Positions 2,277 through 18,835 of a stretch of DNA of 64,000 nucleotides are shown here, piece after piece (position 1 is the stretch's first letter; each line of letters begins with the position of its first letter). The position numbers and the translations under genes were made by a program. The notes under the pieces were generated by a model. That model worked only from the letters and a program-made list of their open reading frames with translations, was not told the origin of the DNA and searched no databases. The stretch spans positions 141,064-205,063 of the IMG/VR virus record IMGVR_UViG_3300043426_000266; one strand, 5' to 3'.

Positions 2277-3131
2277 ATGTCAATAAAACTAGCTTCAATA
2301 ATGGCGGTAGATTTAAGTGGTGGTATTGGTTACAAGGGCCAGTTACCTTGGCAAAGTAACCGAGCGGATATGCGTTGGTTTAAAGATGCAACTCTTCATC
2401 AACAGGTCATTGTAAGTCCAACTACTTATGATGGTATTCCAAACGGTTTACCAGGGCGTCATGTAATTATGGCTCGTCGTCAACACAAAGACGAAACCCG
2501 AGAAATTTATTTAGAGGACCTGACGGGTCATCCTATTGCCAAATGCTTTGATAGTATGTCTAATAAAGGGTTGGGTGATTTACCCATTGTGCTCGGTGGT
2601 AAAAAGGTTTACGAGTCATTCGAACCAGAAACAGTAACAAAGTTTATTACAATTATTCCTGGTCATCATGTTGCCGATACCAAAATGAATCTAGAAAAAC
2701 TCTTCGACCCAGAGCACTGGGAAGCAAGATTTATTGGCGGGTCTATACTTAAAGAACAATATTGTTATCTTGTTATTCTTGACCGTAAGGGTGAAAAGGA
2801 ACATCATCACGGAATGGTAGAGCAGGTGAATAATCATTTTGAACCTTATGTTAAGTTAACGCTAAAAGAAGGAATCGTTGTTAAACCAAATGCACATGGT
2901 GTCTCAAGCATTAATGAATTTATTGTAATCCCTAAACACCAAACGGGTATATTCTCTATCCGTAAATCACTTGCCATAAAAGGATTATATACCTCAGGTC
3001 AGACCTTTTCTCGCAACTGGCTAGGGTATCCACAAATCATCATCACTAATCAATCGCTTAACGAGATTGAATTACCAGCTGGTACAGAAATCGGCGAACT
3101 TGCTTTACTTAACTCCAACTACACAGGTTAA
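2277..3131 (+). CDS. folA: Dihydrofolate reductase fused to a C-terminal degenerate dUTPase/dCTP-deaminase-like domain
   Basis: DHFR motifs IMAVD-x-x-GGIG-x-x-G-x-LPW, DMRWFK-x-x-T, LPGR and IVLGG-x-x-VY. The C-terminal IP-x-x-x-x-G-x-x-x-x-RKS...G-x-PQIII-x-N...ELP-x-G-x-x-IGEL pattern fits the trimeric dUTPase fold. Confidence 0.85.
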   Translation: MSIKLASIMAVDLSGGIGYKGQLPWQSNRADMRWFKDATLHQQVIVSPTTYDGIPNGLPGRHVIMARRQHKDETREIYLEDLTGHPIAKCFDSMSNKGLGDLPIVLGGKKVYESFEPETVTKFITIIPGHHVADTKMNLEKLFDPEHWEARFIGGSILKEQYCYLVILDRKGEKEHHHGMVEQVNNHFEPYVKLTLKEGIVVKPNAHGVSSINEFIVIPKHQTGIFSIRKSLAIKGLYTSGQTFSRNWLGYPQIIITNQSLNEIELPAGTEIGELALLNSNYTG

Positions 3132-3995: not shown

Positions 3996-4002
3996 GCGAC
4001 CT

Positions 4003-4031
4003 AAATAAGAAGGGGTAACCCCTTCTTATTT
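4003..4031 (+). terminator. Intrinsic terminator
   Basis: AAATAAGAAGGGG-TAA-CCCCTTCTTATTT followed by a T-run. Confidence 0.8.
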
Positions 4032-4043
4032 TTTTAGGATTTT

Positions 4044-4049
4044 TATGAG
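4044..4049 (+). promoter_or_regulatory. Candidate late (nvRNAP) promoter TATGAG; also at 13501, 46379, 61269 and 63850
   Basis: TATG is the established phiKZ late-promoter core. Here TATGAG recurs in intergenic gaps shortly upstream of start codons, mostly just after a terminator. Confidence 0.5.
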
Positions 4050-4077
4050 TTTCCCCATTCTATAGTGAGAAAATAAA

Positions 4078-4881
4078 ATGAGTGCAGATGCTGCTACGAA
4101 GATTGATATTGCGCCATTAACAATTGTTGTTTCAGAAGCGCTCGACCCTCGTGTACGTCGTAAGTTAGAGGCAGAACAACAGGCAGATGTAAAGACCTAT
4201 AAAGAATTAACCCGTTCTTTAGAAACTCAAGAAGATTTAAATAAAATCAGACAAGAAGTGGAGGATCAAGGAGATGAAGCAGACCCATTCAAAACTCCAG
4301 AACCAACGGAATCAGAGCCAGCAGAAGCAGAAGCCCAACCCCAACAGCCGACCCCTGCTGAAAACCCAACGCCTGCTGCGGAACAAACTGCTGAACCTGC
4401 AACAACGCCGGCTACTACAGAAGTGCCAGCCGACACAGCAGCTCCAGCGGAGACTCCAGCGGCTACTGGACAAGATCAAGGTGCTGATGAGGATCTTAGT
4501 TCAGCGTTTGAAGGATTTGGCGTAAATTTACCGCGCAATCTTCTTCGTAAAATTGTAAAAGATTACATTAAGATGGAATCAAGTGACATTGACTCGATCG
4601 GTGAATTGGAGCACATTAAGTCATTTGTTTACATCGACTTAAGTCAGAATAAAGTAGATGGTGATACGCTTGAATCAGTTCAAACACTACGTGATCCAGA
4701 AAACACAATTGTGGTTATCAATGAAGAATCGATCCCTGATGCTGATACCACAATTCGTGCCCGCCGTATCGCAGAACAATTGTCTAACCGTGGTGTGAAA
4801 ATCTTCTATGATTTAGAAGAAGCAACAAACTATTTAAATGAACTTTACGATATCGTCTCTGGACGTAAAAAGGATGCTTAA
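4078..4881 (+). CDS. Hypothetical protein with a P/A/E/T-rich linker and a C-terminal alpha/beta (Rossmann-like) domain
   Basis: 267-aa ORF with a low-complexity centre. SLE, MES and TLES motifs could be head-protease sites. The ending RGVKIFYDLEEATNYLNEL resembles nucleoside-deoxyribosyltransferase-like domains (weak). Confidence 0.6.
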   Translation: MSADAATKIDIAPLTIVVSEALDPRVRRKLEAEQQADVKTYKELTRSLETQEDLNKIRQEVEDQGDEADPFKTPEPTESEPAEAEAQPQQPTPAENPTPAAEQTAEPATTPATTEVPADTAAPAETPAATGQDQGADEDLSSAFEGFGVNLPRNLLRKIVKDYIKMESSDIDSIGELEHIKSFVYIDLSQNKVDGDTLESVQTLRDPENTIVVINEESIPDADTTIRARRIAEQLSNRGVKIFYDLEEATNYLNELYDIVSGRKKDA

Positions 4882-6032
4882 TGATAAACTATAAAAGTTT
4901 AGTTGCCGATGTTTTAAATAACGGCAAAATGGTAAACACAGGCAAAGGTAGAACAAAACGTTTAATAGGTGCAATGGTTCGCTATGATATCGGTAATAAA
5001 CTTCCCGTTGTTACCGGTAAAAAAACAAACATCAATTGGGCTTTGATTGAAACCGCAATGTTTCTTAAAGGTGAGCACCATACTGATTTCTTAAAACAAT
5101 ATGGCGCGGAAAAGATTTGGGAAAAACAAGCTTTAAGTGAAGACTTTAAAGTTAAACATCCGATTCCACCCGCTGATGTTATTGCTAAACTGGTTGAATT
5201 AAAAGGTATAACTACCGAAGAAGCTGCCGCTGAGTTTGAAGGTTTAGCTATTGCGTACCAAGAACAACTTGTGAATATCGGCAAAGAATTTCAAGCAAAG
5301 GAAGGTGAAGAAGTTAATGAAGCTGGTTATAAAGAAGCAATTGAAAAACACACAATTGCTTTTGAAACCACTTTAACGGATCTAGGTCTTGAGATTTATT
5401 CAGAAAAGGTCATTTACTCAAAAGGTGAAATGGGTCCTACCTATGGCGCACAATGGGTGAAATGGTTGGGTGTAAATCCAACTGATAATCGTCTAGTGTA
5501 TATTGACCAAATCAAAGAAATTCTTTGGAAATTGGAAAACATCCCAGACTCTCGTCAGATTATTTTATCAGCCTGGAATCCTGCGGTAATTGCTCGAGAA
5601 ACAATTCCGTATGATGCTAAAATTAAAGCGGGTTACATGGGGCAGCCACCATGCCATCTTGTAACTCAATTCTTAGCAGATTTGAATGAAGATGGTACTC
5701 GTACATTAAACGCGGTATTATTTATTCGCTCGAATGACTTAGCTTTAGGCCACCCATTCAATATCATTGGTTACGCGGCGATCCTTCACCTTATTGCTGC
5801 TAAGTTTAACTGGAAGGTAGGTGAGTTGGTTGTTCAAATTGGTGATGCTCATATCTATGAAAATCATCTAGAGGGAATGAAGACTTATCTTTATGATCGT
5901 CCGATTCATGAAACCCCGACATTCAAACTCGCAGAAGGAGTAACGATTGATAACTTCACAGTTGAAGATCTCTTAACTGCGGTTGGTGAATACAAACACG
6001 AGGCGTACATGCCTTTTGAAATTAACGTTTAA
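4881..6032 (+). CDS. thyA: Thymidylate synthase (ThyA type) with an insertion of about 95 aa
   Basis: MGPTYGAQW, SRQIILSAWNP, catalytic PPCH, RSND-x-x-LG-x-PFN-x-x-x-Y, GDAHIYENH. Confidence 0.97.
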   Translation: MINYKSLVADVLNNGKMVNTGKGRTKRLIGAMVRYDIGNKLPVVTGKKTNINWALIETAMFLKGEHHTDFLKQYGAEKIWEKQALSEDFKVKHPIPPADVIAKLVELKGITTEEAAAEFEGLAIAYQEQLVNIGKEFQAKEGEEVNEAGYKEAIEKHTIAFETTLTDLGLEIYSEKVIYSKGEMGPTYGAQWVKWLGVNPTDNRLVYIDQIKEILWKLENIPDSRQIILSAWNPAVIARETIPYDAKIKAGYMGQPPCHLVTQFLADLNEDGTRTLNAVLFIRSNDLALGHPFNIIGYAAILHLIAAKFNWKVGELVVQIGDAHIYENHLEGMKTYLYDRPIHETPTFKLAEGVTIDNFTVEDLLTAVGEYKHEAYMPFEINV

Positions 6033-6044
6033 TAGGTTAACAAG

Positions 6045-6806
6045 ATGGACTTAAAATTAGCACAACGAATCGTCGCAGGTACCGCTGCATTCTTTGATAG
6101 CCGACTACATGCTCGTGTTGATGTAGTTACTCAGTGTGATGGTGAAAAAGCAGTTTATGTGGATTCACTTGGTGTTTCGACAATTCCTGACCCAACCTCA
6201 GTTGGCCATAACCTTTACAAGTTTATCCCAAAAAGTAAAAGTTTCGTTCAAGAACTTCATTTCCAATCTGGTTCGCCATCCAATGGGGTGAATGGATTAA
6301 CGAACGAGTCAGCCTTGGCGGCAGTTTTACACCGTATCACCAAACAGAACGAGACCTTTCCTTCTGCATATAACCAATTAACAATTCTTTGTCTACAAAC
6401 TGCAATTGCGGCTTTGCAGATGCGAATTAAAGATCGTAAAGATTTTGGTATTTATGATACTGATCAAGTTGAGCCAAACGCAGAAACAGAAATGGAAGTT
6501 TCAAAGGCACTCTCAATCATAAACAGTATTGGCCTTCTTGGTGATTTGATTATCAAGTTCGATCGTTCGTATGCTTTATCAGCCCCTGGTGCGGTTCATA
6601 AGCAGATTGAACGTTTACTTGCGTTTGTTAAACCAGAAGAAGAAGTTAACGTGGTTACAGCAACAACAATGATGGGTACTGTGGTGCAGATGTCTGGCAT
6701 TCTTACCTTTTGGCGTGGTCTAGCTGCCAGCATCAATCAGGTTTATAAGGAGAATGTTGATGTCTCAAAACCAGCCGAAAATAATTCAGCTAACGACTCC
6801 GCTTGA
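6045..6806 (+). CDS. Tad1-like anti-defence nucleotide-signal sponge with a C-terminal extension
   Basis: H-x-x-Y...LHFQSG...GVNGLTNES-x-L-x-x-V-x-x-R...F-x-S-x-x-N...A-x-x-x-L-x-x-R-x-x-DR matches the Tad1 family pattern as recalled. Confidence 0.75.
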   Translation: MDLKLAQRIVAGTAAFFDSRLHARVDVVTQCDGEKAVYVDSLGVSTIPDPTSVGHNLYKFIPKSKSFVQELHFQSGSPSNGVNGLTNESALAAVLHRITKQNETFPSAYNQLTILCLQTAIAALQMRIKDRKDFGIYDTDQVEPNAETEMEVSKALSIINSIGLLGDLIIKFDRSYALSAPGAVHKQIERLLAFVKPEEEVNVVTATTMMGTVVQMSGILTFWRGLAASINQVYKENVDVSKPAENNSANDSA

Positions 6807-7272
6807 GCGTTTTCAAAAGTTTGATGCAGCAGTTGATTCAGTTCTTTTGTCACTAGACAAGGTCGGTGAACTTTATACCGACCTTGGGTTTAGAGAAGAC
6901 GACCTTGTAGGTTTATCTGTTCACAAAAAAGAACAGTTTAAAGAGGAATTGATTCAGCATGGCCAACTTTGTCTCGCTCTACTCCACCATCCAATGATTG
7001 AGGTTTTAAAACAAGCCAGAGAAAAAGCCAGAAGACCAGGTGATAACTTAGAGCTTTATAAAACCCCAACTGGTGTATGGCAACATTACAAAGGCAACTA
7101 TTATGAAATGATCGGTGCTTGTAAGTCGACTGATCATCATTGTAATGCCGTAATGTATCAAGAACATGGGAAGCCGGATGGTGATATTTACACAATCACC
7201 TTGTTTAATTTCTACACCAAGAAAGAAGTAAAAGGTCAATATGTTTCTCGTTTTGTAAAAATACGAGAATAA
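6760..7272 (+). CDS. DUF1653-domain protein with an N-terminal degenerate MazG-like helical domain
   Basis: C-terminal GVWQHYKGNYY-x-x-IG...VMY...F...RF matches DUF1653. N-terminal LDKVGEL...FKEELIQ resembles MazG EE-x-GE/EL-x-Q. TAAGGAG SD favours the ATG at 6760. Confidence 0.7.
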   Translation: MSQNQPKIIQLTTPLERFQKFDAAVDSVLLSLDKVGELYTDLGFREDDLVGLSVHKKEQFKEELIQHGQLCLALLHHPMIEVLKQAREKARRPGDNLELYKTPTGVWQHYKGNYYEMIGACKSTDHHCNAVMYQEHGKPDGDIYTITLFNFYTKKEVKGQYVSRFVKIRE

Positions 7273-7274
7273 CT

Positions 7275-7300
7275 TAAACCCTCCCGGTCGGGAGGGTTTA
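7275..7300. terminator. Bidirectional terminator between convergent genes
   Basis: TAAACCCTCCCG-GT-CGGGAGGGTTTA. Confidence 0.8.
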
Positions 7301-7312
7301 TTTATGCAGCAT

Positions 7313-8113
7313 TTACATCTTTCCAATTAAAGCCCGAAGATGTCTTTCTTTAGATTTCGGATCAGCCATAATACTGATCTTCTTCCAACGTTCAGTAAAG
7401 AACTCTTCATACTGTTCCATCGCATCAGAGTAGTTATCAACAATCTCAGCAAATTTACCAAGTTCTTGACCACCATCAAGTTGAGCTCGATCAATCGTTA
7501 CACTAAGCTCTGTCCAGATATGTGCTTTACAGGCTAACTCACAGAGCTTAGCAAATGCAATCCAGGCTGGCTTTGGTAAGTTGTTGAAATTCTCATCCGC
7601 AGACAAATAACAGTTTACAAATAAATTAAAACTGCTGAATAAAATATCTGTCACATAGATGACATTATTATCAAGCAACTCAACAAACGGTGTTCCAGTA
7701 ATTGGTGTCGGCATCACGGAGTCCAATACCTTCTTAGCCCCACTCAACGCAGCATTTGAGTTTAAAGAAGCATAAGTGCTCAAACCACCTGTGTTACCTT
7801 GCCCAAGTTCTACCGAGGTTACACGCGTAATTACGCGCCCCTGCGTCGCACTCATTGGAACACGAATCAAATACTCTCCATTCCCTTGATTGCTTAACCA
7901 GGAAGATTTGATAGGGAGCTGGATAAAGGTAGAACCAAGTAATTCAATATCAGCGGCAACTCGGTTGTCGATAATATGTTCTCTAATAAAAGAATCAATA
8001 GATCGAGATTCTCTATATCGATGACGTCCAGAACTAATAAAGGTCTTTTCTAAAATTTGTCTAGGGATTGCAAATTTAATCTTATTAATTGCGTATGCAA
8101 TAGGGTTTTCCAT
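7313..8113 (-). CDS. Virion neck/head-completion protein (T4 gp13-like)
   Basis: CKAHIW-x-x-L...QLDGG-x-x-LG...Y-x-DA-x-E-x-x-EE parallels the T4 gp13 K-x-x-W-x-x-x-L...QLPGG...Y-x-x-A-x-x-E motif. Confidence 0.55.
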   Translation of the reverse strand: MENPIAYAINKIKFAIPRQILEKTFISSGRHRYRESRSIDSFIREHIIDNRVAADIELLGSTFIQLPIKSSWLSNQGNGEYLIRVPMSATQGRVITRVTSVELGQGNTGGLSTYASLNSNAALSGAKKVLDSVMPTPITGTPFVELLDNNVIYVTDILFSSFNLFVNCYLSADENFNNLPKPAWIAFAKLCELACKAHIWTELSVTIDRAQLDGGQELGKFAEIVDNYSDAMEQYEEFFTERWKKISIMADPKSKERHLRALIGKM

Positions 8114-8200
8114 CGAGTTTAACTCCTATGTATTCAGATGATTATTTAGATATAAACTAGATAGGATAATCATTTGAAGCCTGTAATCTAACGAATTTAA

Positions 8201-8220
8201 GATATATATTATACAAATGA
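8201..8220 (+). promoter_or_regulatory. Candidate early promoter driving the acidic-protein array
   Basis: GATATATATTATACAAATGA; resembles the phiKZ early TATATTAC-type consensus. Confidence 0.6.
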
Positions 8221-8248
8221 GATGGTTAAGATAACCAAAGGAGTTGTT

Positions 8249-9205
8249 ATGCAAAAAGGTTGTTTAATTGAGTTATCAGAAGAGATTACACAATACAACG
8301 ATTTTATTAGTTCTTTATTAAACCCAAAACCTAATTTTTCATTAGTTAACCGAATCTCAGCAGAGTTACTAACAGTACAAATTGAATCTATTTTAGATTC
8401 AAAGTTGAGCTCCGTTTTCAGATCAGGTAGTGATTTATTAGAAACCTTTCAACATGTTATCCAGGTGTTCGATCACCCAGACTTTACCACTGACTCAATC
8501 GCCCAGATTAGTGAATTCCTTTATGAAACCGGAGTTGAGCTTTATAGACGTTTAACAGATATGTTTCACGATGTTGATATAGGTTATGCGCTATGGAATG
8601 TTAAACCAATAAATTCAACGGTTGCATTGGTTGAGTACTTGGGGGATTACCGTATCATGGAATGGCATGAACGTAGCGGGATTGCCTATGATAAAACTCA
8701 GAACGATGTTAAGTACGAGTTTGAAATTAGCTCTGCGGTAAGTGTAATTAAATCAGCATTAGAGAAACATCGAGGTCGTTATGCAGGGAATTTCTTTGCA
8801 CGAACAATCTCACACATTGTTAATGTGATTATCGAAGAATTTGTATTTCTTGGTAACAACCTTAAACTCTATGATGGTTTAACTGATGTGTATGCTTCTG
8901 AGTACCAGCTAACAAAAACTAAACTCTTGGATTATTTCCCTCATTTAACAACGGCAGAGTTATCTGCTTTCGTCGTCGATGTTGAGCAAACGATTAATGA
9001 ATATGTGGTAAAACCAATTCAACTGATTACACAATTGGATGAGGTAAATACTTGGTACGTCACAGACAACATTCTTACAATCAACATTGACAAACCTTTA
9101 ACTATCGTAGACTTTGGGGAACGTTTGAAAAATGATATCCGAGCTTCTATTGCTAATGGAGATTGGGTTCCCCCAAAAATGCGAGATATCGCGGAATTTT
9201 ACTAA
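8249..9205 (+). CDS. Hypothetical protein (318 aa), first gene of the acidic array; two similar halves
   Basis: Start moved to the ATG after the AAAGGAG SD. Confidence 0.75.
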   Translation: MQKGCLIELSEEITQYNDFISSLLNPKPNFSLVNRISAELLTVQIESILDSKLSSVFRSGSDLLETFQHVIQVFDHPDFTTDSIAQISEFLYETGVELYRRLTDMFHDVDIGYALWNVKPINSTVALVEYLGDYRIMEWHERSGIAYDKTQNDVKYEFEISSAVSVIKSALEKHRGRYAGNFFARTISHIVNVIIEEFVFLGNNLKLYDGLTDVYASEYQLTKTKLLDYFPHLTTAELSAFVVDVEQTINEYVVKPIQLITQLDEVNTWYVTDNILTINIDKPLTIVDFGERLKNDIRASIANGDWVPPKMRDIAEFY

Positions 9206-16916: not shown

Positions 16917-16969
16917 GAGACTAATTAATGTCTTTTCATTAACAATTGTTATCAAGCAAGGATATATCC

Positions 16970-18835
16970 ATGACAAGTTTAAAAATCGGTAATCAAAATC
17001 AAGAAACAACTCAAAACCAAACTAACGATCGCGGTCATGGTGGCGACCGCCGTGAGTCTCGTCGTGAGTCTCGCCGCAAAAATGCAGACGACACGTTCGT
17101 AAGTTTAGTAGAATTGCTTCGCCCAGAAGCAGCTGGCAAAGCAATGCAACCCCGTGCTGAAAATGCACTTAAATGGGTGCAAGCTTCACTTGCTCGTGAT
17201 CCTGAAATTATTAAAGGCCATGAAGTTCGCATCACTTCAATTTCTCGTGAAAAAGGATACCCAGTTAAATATCCTGGTATCGTCATCACTTTGTTTAACC
17301 CATCAACAAATCGTATCGCTTCACATACCTTGATGTTAGAAGATGGCGAAACATTACAACCATTAGAAAACCGTACTTTCCGCGGCGAAAATATTACCCC
17401 AGAACCAGTACCTTCAATGGTGTGGGATTCTGAATACCAACAAGCGGTTCGCACAGAAGTGTACGAGCTTTATAAAGACGTGGCTGATGTGAAATATGCA
17501 TCAATGGGTGTGACTGTAGTTCCACACACACTGTCTATCCCAATTATCACTGAACATACCAGTCAAGACATTAACCCGTTAGATGCGCAGTTTGTTGCAA
17601 TTGTAGAAAGCTTGTCAAGTTTCTACAAATGGTTAGGTCGTGATGCAAGTCGTGTTAAACTAGGTGAAGCATTCAACCCTGACCGTGAACAGCTGGTTGC
17701 AAACGTTGACCAAGCACCAACCATTGAGTTTGATCAAATGGGTCAACCACGTCGTTCAGACTTCTGTATTTCGTTGTCTGTGAAAAAGCGCCGTGATGAA
17801 AAACGCGACGTTGGTCCGCTGTCTTATAACCGCGATGACCAAGTTGATTCCGGTACTATTCTTCGTGTATCAGGTTATTGCTTGCCTTACTACACTCAAC
17901 CAAACCTCGATGATAAAAAACCACGTAACTTCGGTATCAATATCATCGTAACTGCAATTGAAGGTAAATCAACACCGTCGTTAGAATTGTTCCTTTACGG
18001 TATGGCTTCAACAACTGTATTGACCAACAACGACATGTGGGCGGATGGTTTCAAACCAGCATTGATCGTTGCAGACCCAATGCGTAACCTTGGTGGCCTG
18101 TTCCTTGAGATCCCTGATCAAAATGGTGAATCAATGCCGCGTCGTGACTACGCTGCGAGTTCATCTAATGAATTCTTAGATGACGTAGATTTCTTGTTCA
18201 GCTCTGATGTTACTGTGTCGTTAGATTGTTCTGAATCTGGTGCGACTGCCTGGATTACAGATTTGTTCTTGAACAACGATCTTGACGCAATTGAAGAAGC
18301 TGCTGACAACTTGACCAACGAAGAATATAGCGCCATCGTGAACAACGATGTGAATGATGCAATTGTTCGTAGTGATACTCGTCGTTTCTATACTGGTGAA
18401 TACAGCGGTGCACATTCTGTACGTGATATTCGTGATGTTGATTATTTATATCTTATCAACAAATTCGATGAAAACGGTTCCGCAGAAGCTGCAAAAGACT
18501 GGGATGAATCTTTGGGTGATGATAGCGAGTATGGTTTACACCAACGTGCGGTATTGACTCAAGAAGCACTTGGTCACGGCACTTATCGTATCACTGGTGT
18601 GGTTGACCGTGTGAAACTTGATGCTTCATTCTTTGAAGCAGTTGTGAATGCGTTACATAACACTGACATGCTTCCTAACACCAATGATATTTCTCGTGGC
18701 TTCCGTCCTAAACAGCGTCTTGAAGCGAAAAATGTTAAAGGTCGTATGGACAGCCAAGAGCTTGGTTCAAACTATCGCACCAACCATAGTCGCCAGGTTA
18801 ATCGTCAACGTAATGCATTTCGTGATCGCGGTTAA
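16970..18835 (+). CDS. chmA: Chimallin, phage nuclear shell protein
   Basis: 621 aa, directly upstream of the nvRNAP beta-prime gene. G-x-P-x-RSDF, MRNLGGL and RDIRDVDYL-x-x-IN parallel the chimallin motifs G-x-P-x-RAD, MKDIGAL and RD-x-RDLD-x-L. Codon bias of a highly expressed gene; own promoter and terminator. Start placed at the ATG after AAGGA. Confidence 0.88.
   Translation: MTSLKIGNQNQETTQNQTNDRGHGGDRRESRRESRRKNADDTFVSLVELLRPEAAGKAMQPRAENALKWVQASLARDPEIIKGHEVRITSISREKGYPVKYPGIVITLFNPSTNRIASHTLMLEDGETLQPLENRTFRGENITPEPVPSMVWDSEYQQAVRTEVYELYKDVADVKYASMGVTVVPHTLSIPIITEHTSQDINPLDAQFVAIVESLSSFYKWLGRDASRVKLGEAFNPDREQLVANVDQAPTIEFDQMGQPRRSDFCISLSVKKRRDEKRDVGPLSYNRDDQVDSGTILRVSGYCLPYYTQPNLDDKKPRNFGINIIVTAIEGKSTPSLELFLYGMASTTVLTNNDMWADGFKPALIVADPMRNLGGLFLEIPDQNGESMPRRDYAASSSNEFLDDVDFLFSSDVTVSLDCSESGATAWITDLFLNNDLDAIEEAADNLTNEEYSAIVNNDVNDAIVRSDTRRFYTGEYSGAHSVRDIRDVDYLYLINKFDENGSAEAAKDWDESLGDDSEYGLHQRAVLTQEALGHGTYRITGVVDRVKLDASFFEAVVNALHNTDMLPNTNDISRGFRPKQRLEAKNVKGRMDSQELGSNYRTNHSRQVNRQRNAFRDRG

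What the first reader, a model, noticed from the sequence alone, without database searches (positions are those of the whole stretch)
6045..6806. Tad1-like anti-defence sponge with rewired pocket residues and an extra 110-aa domain
Seen: residues about 50-140 read GHNLY...ELHFQSGSPSNGVNGLTNESALAAVLHR...FPSAYN...TAIAALQMRIKDRKDFGIYDT. Established: Tad1 proteins sequester Thoeris gcADPR and CBASS cyclic oligonucleotides, with the pattern H-x-Y...FQ-x-G...G...LL...RL...F-x-S/C-REN...EEAL-x-W...R-x-x-DR-x-x-R-x-V-x-GT (recalled). Here REN becomes AYN, EEALxW becomes QTAIAA, and the terminal R-x-V-x-G becomes FGIY. A hydrophobic helical C-terminal domain is added. Inference: altered signal specificity or a second function. 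The nuclear shell protects DNA from nucleases but not from signalling-based abortive infection, so a sponge would be useful to this phage.
Basis: partly seen in the sequence, partly recalled or inferred. Interest (0 to 1): 0.75.

Follow-up and report, generated by a model that had tools for sequence, protein, structure and literature searches.

The report
Tad1-family sponge with extra helical tail
A nucleus-forming giant phage from fresh and waste water encodes a real relative of the known Tad1 immune-signal "sponge" that keeps most of the small-signal pocket, lacks the second binding site, and carries a conserved extra helical tail of unknown role.

Summary
The ORF at 6045..6806 (+, 253 aa) is real, conserved and under purifying selection. 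Residues about 31-141 are a genuine Tad1 domain. The clade profile hits CmTad1 at E 1.8e-06, a wider profile hits all solved Tad1 chains at 1e-18 to 1e-24, and the AlphaFold model's 20 best PDB matches are all Tad1.

Three of the four residues needed for gcADPR/cyclic-dinucleotide binding are kept (N110, R127, R131). The cyclic-trinucleotide residues and the hexamer interface are replaced.

In the model, the first helix of the 112-aa extension (147-176) packs on the Tad1 helical hairpin. The rest folds poorly, is not membrane-like and has no relatives outside the clade.

The gene sits between thymidylate synthase and a DUF1653 gene throughout a deep, uncultured chimallivirus lineage.

Tad1 is already known in chimalliviruses (phiKZ gp184, packaged and injected), so this is a new architectural variant, not a new kind. 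Sponge activity, ligand and oligomeric state remain untested.

The parts
6045..6806 (+). Whole gene, 253 aa plus stop: Tad1-family protein with C-terminal extension
   Evidence: ORF. 19 homologues of 39-72% identity over 87-100% of the length, plus fragments. In wastewater strains all 8 natural variants lie at third codon positions and 7 are synonymous.
6045..6134 (+). Residues 1-30: N-terminal helices ahead of the Tad1 domain
   Evidence: Helices 3-16 and 19-23 at pLDDT 67-72. They lie outside the part aligned to solved Tad1 chains (model 32/34 onward).
6135..6467 (+). Residues 31-141: Tad1 domain (beta-sheet 45-73, helices 87-104 and 108-133, C-terminal 'lid' 134-139)
   Evidence: Profile hits to all Tad1 structures. 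Foldseek top 20 are all Tad1, TM by target 0.62-0.72. VIA-align gives 8kbe_A Z 9.1, rmsd 2.4 over 109 residues, and 8kbb_A Z 8.3, rmsd 2.0. pLDDT is 85-98.
6372..6374 (+). N110, equivalent of CbTad1 N92 (gcADPR/CDN pocket)
   Evidence: Alignment. N in 17/17 of the clade and 106/110 other homologues.
6423..6437 (+). R127...R131 (RIKDR), equivalents of CbTad1 R109 and R113 (gcADPR/CDN pocket)
   Evidence: R127 is invariant in all 127 sequences. R131 is in 17/17 of the clade and 104/110 others.
6366..6389 (+). A108 to L115: positions of the cyclic-trinucleotide-binding R90 and T97 of CbTad1, both replaced
   Evidence: Alignments. The clade has A/P at 108 and Y/L/I at 115.
6444..6461 (+). F134-G-I-Y-D-T139: F, G, I, D and T invariant in the clade, Y137 in 13 of 17; replaces the R-G-V-E-G-T lid of most Tad1 homologues
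   Evidence: F134 in 17/17 against R in 80/110 others; Y137 against E in 68/110; D138 against G in 83/110.
6483..6572 (+). Residues 147-176: first helix of the extension, modelled as the third helix of a bundle with the Tad1 hairpin
   Evidence: pLDDT 91-93 in the full-length model against 55-60 when folded alone. Residues 86-180 align to three-helix bundles. It is the best conserved part of the extension. A hydrophobic stripe is gained on helix 108-133.
6591..6767 (+). Residues 183-241: three further helices, rich in S/T/A/G, low confidence
   Evidence: pLDDT 59-65. Summed insertion free energy is +3.7 to +6 kcal/mol, so not membrane-like. No relatives outside the clade.
6768..6803 (+). Residues 242-253: disordered acidic tail ending in a conserved short motif
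   Evidence: pLDDT under 50. The linker varies in length but the end motif is conserved in the alignment.
4881..6032 (+). Thymidylate synthase gene, directly upstream (13-nt gap)
   Evidence: PF00303 at E 5.9e-57. ThyA lies upstream of the homologue in all 7 related contexts: directly in 6, one small gene apart in L017.
6747..7272 (+). AAGGAG ribosome-binding site (6747-6752) and DUF1653 gene (probable start 6760), overlapping the end of the Tad1-like gene
   Evidence: Sequence. PF07866 at E 3.1e-08. Same neighbour in relatives down to 25% identity.
7275..7300 (.). 11-bp GC-rich hairpin between the convergent + strand block and the - strand DUF7484 gene: likely terminator
   Evidence: Terminator scan.

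Best explanation
The gene encodes a member of the Tad1 family of phage 'sponges', proteins that bind and hide the small nucleotide signals made by bacterial Thoeris (TIR) and CBASS (cGAS-like) defences.

Shown: residues 31-141 are homologous to Tad1 and are predicted to adopt its fold. They keep the family-wide conserved residues, including three of the four residues whose mutation abolishes gcADPR and 2',3'-cGAMP binding in CbTad1.

Inferred: the protein still sequesters an ADP-ribose-derived or cyclic-dinucleotide-type signal in a pocket between two protomers, helped by a clade-specific aromatic lid (F134, Y137). It has lost the cyclic-trinucleotide site and the canonical trimer-of-dimers interface. 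The first helix of the C-terminal extension packs on that same face of the helical hairpin, so the oligomer probably differs from the Tad1 hexamer.

The gene lies in one block with the nucleotide-metabolism genes (DHFR, ThyA) and overlaps the DUF1653 gene. From this I infer that it is made in the infected cell's cytoplasm, where a nuclear shell gives no protection against signalling-based defence. The role of residues 177-253 is unknown.
For: Homology. Of 1327 profile hits at E<=0.001, most of the 150 listed are 105-135 aa proteins matching profile positions about 32-139.

Fold.

Pocket residues were mapped through the HMMER alignments onto the mutational data in bioRxiv 10.1101/2023.11.15.567273, and are conserved across 127 homologues.

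Burial of the former hexamer face:
- Hydrophobicity is gained at 111, 112, 115, 116, 119, 122 and 126 compared with 100 short homologues.
- Helix 147-176 is confident only in the context of the Tad1 domain.
- Residues 86-180 match three-helix bundles.

Anti-defence association of the nearest short relatives: in OBP, Yubaba and a metagenomic chimallivirus they sit directly upstream of Acb1 genes.

Real, selected gene.

Chimallivirus identity. A Tad1 is already known to act for phiKZ.
Against: No binding or protection data exist for this clade.

One validated pocket residue, F82, is replaced by K100/Q101, and the lid arginine present in most homologues is F134.

Pfam's Acb2/Tad1 hairpin model does not score the protein.

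The three-helix packing rests on a monomer model whose coordinates I could not inspect. Oligomers could not be modelled.

Fixed synteny across a deep lineage, with divergence no faster than ThyA, is unusual for an anti-defence gene and could point to a housekeeping role.

The record is about 70% complete, and the host and its defences are unknown.
Confidence: 0.6

Rival explanations
1. A packaged and injected Tad1. As with phiKZ gp184, the protein is built into the head and delivered with the DNA. Here the C-terminal extension and its conserved end motif, rather than an N-terminal one, would serve as the head-incorporation or anchoring part. This concerns the role of the extension and is compatible with sponge activity.
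For: phiKZ gp184 is a Tad1 domain (residues 117-226, E about 2e-06 to every solved Tad1) behind an N-terminal part wedged into the capsid. It is cleaved by the head protease and injected. A 145-aa Tad1-fold protein of chimallivirus Eowyn is annotated 'structural protein'. This record holds no second Tad1-like gene that could be the packaged one. The acidic linker at 142-152 separates the two parts.
Against: The extension shows no similarity to the gp184 N-terminus (hhalign probability 0.2%) and has no paralogue in the record. The gene lies in a nucleotide-metabolism block, not among head genes. The first helix of the extension seems integrated into the Tad1 domain rather than detachable. The S/A/G-x-E motif that I recall for the phiKZ head protease is not consistently present in the linker. 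In a quick tree the clade is a separate lineage from gp184.
Confidence: 0.2
2. A Tad1 fold put to another use. The protein would be a conserved lineage-specific factor, for example a nucleotide-binding regulator or partner of the thymidylate-synthesis genes or of the DUF1653 protein, and not an immune-signal sponge.
For: The order ThyA, then the Tad1-like gene, then DUF1653 is kept down to 23-27% identity. Its divergence matches that of ThyA and DUF1653. It overlaps the DUF1653 gene, which points to coupled translation. The trinucleotide site and hexamer interface are lost.
Against: The residues that are best kept are exactly those that hold the ligand in Tad1 (N110, R127, R131, plus the family-wide F73, Q74, G76, N83, G84, E88 and R97). 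The closest short relatives sit next to Acb1 anti-CBASS genes. In phages, adjacency to metabolic genes is weak evidence of shared function.
Confidence: 0.15
3. A membrane-anchored sponge. The two hydrophobic helices of the extension would insert into the cell membrane or the early infection vesicle.
For: There are two stretches of about 20 residues with few or no charged residues (152-172, which holds D167 and K171, and 201-223, uncharged), with a Kyte-Doolittle maximum of 1.56. Chimalliviruses do use a lipid vesicle early in infection (abstracts listed).
Against: The summed biological-hydrophobicity free energies are +3.7 to +6 kcal/mol in all 16 clade members, far from membrane helices. The scale values were recalled from memory, and position effects were ignored. 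The first stretch is modelled with high confidence as packed on the Tad1 hairpin.
Confidence: 0.05

Closest known systems
Tad1 (Thoeris anti-defence 1): CbTad1 (7UAV, 7UAW, 8SMD, 8KBE) and CmTad1 (8KBB-D)
   Same: Homologous sequence and the same predicted fold over residues 31-141. It keeps the N92, R109 and R113 equivalents and the FQxG...G(V/I)NG...E...R core. It is phage-encoded.
   Different: Twice the length (253 against about 120-140 aa). The trinucleotide-binding R and T are absent, the hexamer-interface residues are replaced by small or hydrophobic ones, the pocket F82 is replaced, and the lid is FGIYDT instead of R-x-V-x-GT. A helical extension of about 112 aa is added. Binding has not been tested.
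phiKZ gp184 (Tad1 of a chimallivirus; inner-capsid vertex-binding protein, PDB 8Y6V chain I)
   Same: A Tad1 domain carried by a nucleus-forming jumbo phage and joined to an extra region.
   Different: In gp184 the extra region is N-terminal (about 116 aa), is wedged in the capsid and is cut off by the head protease. Here the extension is C-terminal, unrelated in sequence and apparently packed on the domain. gp184 keeps a canonical CEEN motif and a RRKEQGTEGT end. The genomic setting differs, and in the quick tree it is a separate lineage.
Short Tad1-like proteins of Petsuvirus chimalliviruses (OBP_060, 108 aa; Yubaba_02250, 151 aa) and metagenomic P0025
   Same: These are the closest relatives in cultured phages (32-38% identity over the domain; the 108-aa BFVD entry G9I9V2, probably OBP_060, at TM by target 0.85). 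They are chimallivirus-encoded.
   Different: They have no C-terminal extension. They sit directly upstream of an Acb1 gene rather than between ThyA and DUF1653.
Acb2 (anti-CBASS 2)
   Same: Pfam joins the Acb2 and Tad1 helical hairpins in PF24729. T4 Vs.4 (7UQ2) appears as a weak structural match (Z 7.3).
   Different: No sequence match. The beta-sheet half of the domain is Tad1-like, not Acb2-like.

Membership tests
Tad1 family | Significant sequence homology to experimentally characterised Tad1 proteins | tested here: met
   The clade profile hits 8kbb at E 1.8e-06. The wider profile, seeded only from the clade's own hits, reaches all Tad1 chains at 2.7e-24 to 4e-18.
Tad1 family | Tad1 fold: N-terminal antiparallel beta-sheet followed by two long helices | tested here: met
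   The AF2 model has pLDDT 85-98 over the domain. The Foldseek top 20 are all Tad1 at probability 1.00. VIA-align gives Z 9.1 and 8.3 at rmsd 2.0-2.4 over 107-109 residues.
Tad1 family | gcADPR/cyclic-dinucleotide pocket residues (CbTad1 F82, N92, R109, R113) | tested here: inconclusive
   N110, R127 and R131 are kept and near-invariant. The F82 position holds K100/Q101. Three of four are met; the effect on binding is unknown.
Tad1 family | Cyclic-trinucleotide site (CbTad1 R90 and T97; CmTad1 R88 and T95) | tested here: not met
   A108 and L115 here; the clade has A/P and Y/L/I. Li et al. report that 6% of Tad1 homologues have substitutions at this site.
Tad1 family | Hexamer (trimer of dimers) through the helical hairpin (CmTad1 R88, T95, K96, Q98, E99, M102, W103, K106) | tested here: inconclusive
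   Seven of the eight interface positions are replaced (A108, L115, C116, T119, A122, A123, M126); only Q118 matches. A hydrophobic stripe is gained. The oligomeric state itself could not be modelled or measured.
Tad1 family | Sequesters Thoeris or CBASS signals and rescues phage from those systems | not testable with these tools
   This needs binding and plaque assays.
Tad1 family | Small single-domain protein (about 105-140 aa) | tested here: not met
   253 aa. Most of the 150 listed profile hits are 105-135 aa.
Pfam PF24729 Acb2/Tad1 hairpin | Scores above the Pfam model's threshold | tested here: not met
   No Pfam family at E<=1. Only 3 of 127 homologues match at E<=0.01. Even so, 93 of the 100 nearest ESM Atlas clusters share a Pfam family set headed by PF24729, and relative P0022 has a weak precomputed hit.
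Packaged Tad1 of the phiKZ gp184 type | N-terminal capsid-anchoring region removed by the head protease | tested here: not met
   Only about 30 residues precede the domain. The extension is C-terminal and unrelated to the gp184 N-terminus.
Packaged Tad1 of the phiKZ gp184 type | Present in virions and injected | not testable with these tools
   The phage is uncultured and no proteome exists.

The most novel reading that the evidence does not exclude
The extension has remade the sponge. Its first helix would fill the hairpin face that other Tad1 proteins use to build the hexamer and the trinucleotide site. That would give a different oligomer with an aromatic lid (F134, Y137), tuned to a signal other than those known for Tad1. 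The low-complexity linker and conserved end motif would dock the protein to a phage or host structure such as the head, the early vesicle or the nuclear shell. On this reading, a counter-defence protein has become a fixed, vertically inherited core gene of a chimallivirus lineage.
Probability: 0.25. Interest if true: 0.7.

Novelty: new variant of a known kind. Interest (0 to 1): 0.45.

Why it matters
Nucleus-forming phages hide their DNA from nucleases but not from defences that sense infection and signal with small nucleotides. The papers read here name Tad1 (phiKZ gp184) as the only counter-measure of this kind known in jumbo phages.

This lineage shows a second, independent way in which a chimallivirus carries a Tad1 domain: a C-terminal extension built onto the domain, the trinucleotide site lost, and a fixed place in the genome over deep divergence.

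If the protein binds a signal, it gives three things:
- a natural experiment on how the two Tad1 sites and its oligomer can be uncoupled;
- possibly a probe for a new signal;
- a handle on which signalling defences the unknown freshwater and wastewater host uses.

If it does not bind a signal, it would be an example of a sponge fold recruited to another task.

Tried and rejected
- Megablast of 4000-9000 against phage records found nothing, and no relative of the clade turned up in IMG/VR contigs by pattern scan. The clade is known only from Logan and ENA assemblies.
- Pfam on the whole protein gave no family. Pfam on 19 extension sequences gave only chance-level hits.
- A word-indexed search restricted to residues 142-253 found only four proteins of the window's own sub-clade. 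ESM Atlas feature scores for that part were 0.50, which is uninformative, and the structure rows were generic helical matches to a low-confidence model.
- The extension was folded alone and gave pLDDT 55.6 and pTM 0.29, too poor for a fold search, so none was run.
- No paralogue of the extension exists in the phage record, and it shows no homology to the gp184 N-terminus.
- The membrane-anchor idea was rejected on hydrophobicity.
- A sigma-70 promoter scan found no more sites than shuffled sequence (18 against 21.8), as expected for a phage that uses its own RNA polymerases.
- The freshwater metatranscriptome X20 holds only four 151-nt contigs in the region, one inside the gene (6057-6207). 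This does not show transcription.
- The DUF1653 neighbour has no solved relative, and the record holds no Acb1.
- The Nature version of Li et al. (PMC12159963) is not held, so phiKZ Tad1 details come from secondary sources.
- The model coordinates are not exposed, so helix packing and pocket geometry could not be measured directly.
- The careful tree did not finish, so only the quick tree is reported.

Full report
**The observation**

An ORF runs from 6045 to 6806 on the + strand (253 aa).

It is a real gene:
- 19 related proteins (a few of them fragments) were found in public assemblies. Sixteen of them share 39-72% identity over 87-100% of the query, and most are 252-258 aa long.
- Wastewater strains about 99% identical carry eight differences inside the ORF. 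All eight are at third codon positions and seven are synonymous. Four of them lie in the C-terminal extension.

**The genome**

The window is the last 64 kb of a 205-kb IMG/VR virus record that is about 70% complete. It encodes:
- a nuclear-shell (chimallin) homologue at 16946..18835;
- split multisubunit RNA polymerase beta subunits;
- two DNA polymerase pieces;
- the phiKZ gp42 orthologue (DUF7484, 7313..8113, minus strand).

The chimallin is only 22-25% identical to those of cultured phages, so this is a deep, uncultured chimallivirus. Near-identical DNA occurs in freshwater and wastewater metagenomes of several studies.

**Homology to Tad1**

| Query | Target | Result |
|---|---|---|
| Single sequence | PHROG 2428, residues 64-141 | E 1.5e-15 |
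| Single sequence | CmTad1 8kbb | E 0.038 |
| Profile of the clade | 8kbb | E 1.8e-06 |
| Profile of the clade | phiKZ gp184 | E 6.4e-04 |
| Profile of the clade | CbTad1 chains | E about 0.2 |
| 127-sequence profile | every solved Tad1 chain | E 2.7e-24 to 4e-18 |
| 127-sequence profile | gp184 | E 1.2e-19 |

An exhaustive profile search of 1.84 billion representatives gave 1327 hits at E<=0.001. Most of the 150 listed are 105-135 aa proteins that match profile positions about 32-139. The 127-sequence profile above was built from the clade plus these hits.

An AlphaFold2 model made with that alignment has mean pLDDT 80 and pTM 0.74, with 85-98 over residues 21-180:
- Its 20 best Foldseek matches in the PDB are all Tad1 (probability 1.00, TM by target 0.62-0.72).
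- VIA-align superposes model residues 34-142 on CbTad1 (Z 9.1, rmsd 2.4, 109 residues) and residues 32-138 on CmTad1 (Z 8.3, rmsd 2.0).
- The best viral match is a 108-aa entry without a name in the tables at hand, probably OBP_060 (TM by target 0.85).

Residues 31-141 are therefore a Tad1 domain.

**Which residues changed**

Li et al. (bioRxiv 10.1101/2023.11.15.567273) showed three things:
- CbTad1 F82, N92, R109 and R113 are needed for gcADPR and 2',3'-cGAMP binding.
- R90 and T97 are needed for cyclic trinucleotides.
- The helical hairpin (CmTad1 R88, T95, K96, Q98, E99, M102, W103, K106) builds the hexamer.

Through the HMMER alignments these sites map as follows.

| Site in Tad1 | Here | Note |
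|---|---|---|
| N92 | N110 | kept |
| R109 | R127 | kept; invariant in all 127 homologues |
| R113 | R131 | kept |
| F82 | K100/Q101 | replaced |
| R90 | A108 | trinucleotide site lost |
| T97 | L115 | trinucleotide site lost |
| Hexamer interface | A108, L115, C116, T119, A122, A123, M126 | replaced (Q118 kept) |

All family-wide near-invariant positions (Y58, F73, Q74, G76, G81, N83, G84, E88, R97, N110, A120, R127, R131) are present.

Much of it (FPSxxN instead of F-S/C-REN, A instead of W) is the norm among the other homologues recovered, most of them short.

What is specific to this clade is the C-terminal lid FGIYDT. F, G, I, D and T are invariant in the clade and Y137 is in 13 of 17. 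Most homologues have R-G-V-E-G-T there.

**The extension**

Residues 142-253 are predicted as a short acidic linker, a long helix (147-176, pLDDT 91-93), three further helices (183-241, pLDDT 59-65) and a disordered tail. Folded alone, the extension is poor throughout (pLDDT 55.6, pTM 0.29).

In the full model, residues 86-180 align as a unit to compact three-helix bundles. So the first helix seems to pack on the two Tad1 helices.

Sequence supports this independently. Compared with 100 short homologues, the clade has gained hydrophobicity at 111, 112, 115, 116, 119, 122 and 126. These positions form one face of helix 108-133, the face that builds the hexamer and the trinucleotide site in CmTad1 and CbTad1.

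The extension is conserved, though less than the domain (mean column identity 0.59 against 0.73). It ends in a short conserved motif behind a linker of variable length.

Other tests on the extension came back negative:
- It is not membrane-like.
- It has no relatives outside the clade, no Pfam family and no paralogue in the record.
- It is unrelated to the capsid-anchoring N-terminus of phiKZ gp184.

**Context**

The gene lies in a + strand block:
- a DHFR fused to a dUTPase/dCTP-deaminase-like domain (2277..3131);
- two unknown ORFs;
- ThyA;
- the Tad1-like gene;
- a DUF1653 gene.

The block ends at a strong hairpin (7275-7300), facing the convergent DUF7484 gene. The DUF1653 gene probably starts at 6760, behind an AAGGAG at 6747-6752 inside the Tad1-like ORF. 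That gives a 47-nt overlap and suggests coupled translation.

The order ThyA, Tad1-like gene, DUF1653 and then DUF7484 on the minus strand (directly, or after one or two small genes) is kept in five related contexts at 66, 43, 39, 32 and 27% identity. In the most distant of them (L017) one small gene lies between ThyA and the Tad1-like gene. Two short contigs add ThyA and the Tad1-like gene. The gene diverges about as fast as ThyA and DUF1653.

In a quick maximum-likelihood tree of the domain:
- The extended, ThyA-linked proteins fall on one side of a branch (SH-aLRT 87).
- The gp184 domain lies in another, well-supported group (97).
- The careful search did not finish, so this is provisional.

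**What is already known**

phiKZ gp184 is a Tad1. Its residues 117-226 match every solved Tad1 at about 2e-06. Its N-terminus is wedged into the inner capsid vertex complex (PMC11297242), and the C-terminal part is freed by the head protease and injected (bioRxiv 10.1101/2025.11.23.690004; review PMC13282480).

Short Tad1-like genes of OBP and Yubaba, and of a metagenomic chimallivirus, lie directly upstream of Acb1 anti-CBASS genes (PF23474, 50.6 and 51.1 bits against a cut-off of 27). This ties the nearest short relatives to counter-defence.

The window's record holds no Acb1 and no second Tad1-like gene.

**Conclusion**

The best-supported reading is a Tad1-family sponge of a new architecture. 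It would be made in the cytoplasm. It retains the pocket for ADP-ribose-derived or cyclic-dinucleotide signals, lacks the trinucleotide site, and has its former hexamer face covered by the first helix of a C-terminal extension.

| Claim | Confidence |
|---|---|
| Homology and fold | about 0.95 |
| Sponge activity | about 0.6 |
| The structural details | lower than 0.6 |

The rivals are a packaged and injected form, a non-immune role tied to its fixed neighbours, and, unlikely, a membrane anchor. None can be settled without oligomer modelling, binding assays and a cultured relative.

It is a new variant of a known kind, of moderate interest.

Noticed in passing
L011:2902-3699 (OBP_060/061); L012:2932-3855 (Yubaba_02250/02260); L018:6001-6814: In Petsuvirus-type chimalliviruses a short Tad1-like gene is followed directly by an Acb1 (PF23474) gene, forming a two-gene counter-defence pair. 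The records call the Acb1 of OBP and N1M2 'RNA ligase' (Yubaba's is 'hypothetical protein') and some of the Tad1-likes 'ABC transporter ATPase'.
   Followed up: partly
window 6747-7272: The DUF1653 gene overlaps the end of the Tad1-like gene by 47 nt, with an AAGGAG site inside it. The pair is kept across the lineage down to about 25% identity. The DUF1653 protein has no solved relative and no PHROG.
   Followed up: partly
window 2277-3131: This ORF joins a DHFR domain (residues 5-149) to a dUTPase/dCTP-deaminase-like domain (173-277). The same fusion is seen in related contigs.
   Followed up: no
window 4078-4881: This 267-aa ORF has a long acidic stretch rich in Pro, Ala and Thr. One wastewater run carries a diverged replacement of 4593-4804 inside it, so it is a variable segment among strains.
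   Followed up: no
window 16946-18835: The chimallin (nuclear shell) homologue is only 22-25% identical to those of cultured chimalliviruses, so the phage belongs to a deep uncultured branch found in freshwater and wastewater.
   Followed up: partly
P0038 (284 aa, metagenomic): This protein has two Tad1 domains in tandem. The second has fully canonical motifs (FSCREN...LQESLMW...RGVEGK).
   Followed up: no
P0023 (149 aa, metagenomic): Here the C-terminal extension stands alone behind a signal-peptide-like N-terminus. It may be a chimeric or truncated gene call.
   Followed up: no
P0118, P0120, P0151, P0064, P0068 (metagenomic): These Tad1-domain proteins carry unrelated C-terminal extensions of 70-115 aa. 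In the quick tree they fall outside the ThyA-linked clade, so Tad1 domains have been extended more than once.
   Followed up: no
window 7275-7300: An 11-bp GC-rich hairpin lies between convergent genes and is likely a two-way terminator. Natural variants at 7287 and 7288 fall in its loop.
   Followed up: no
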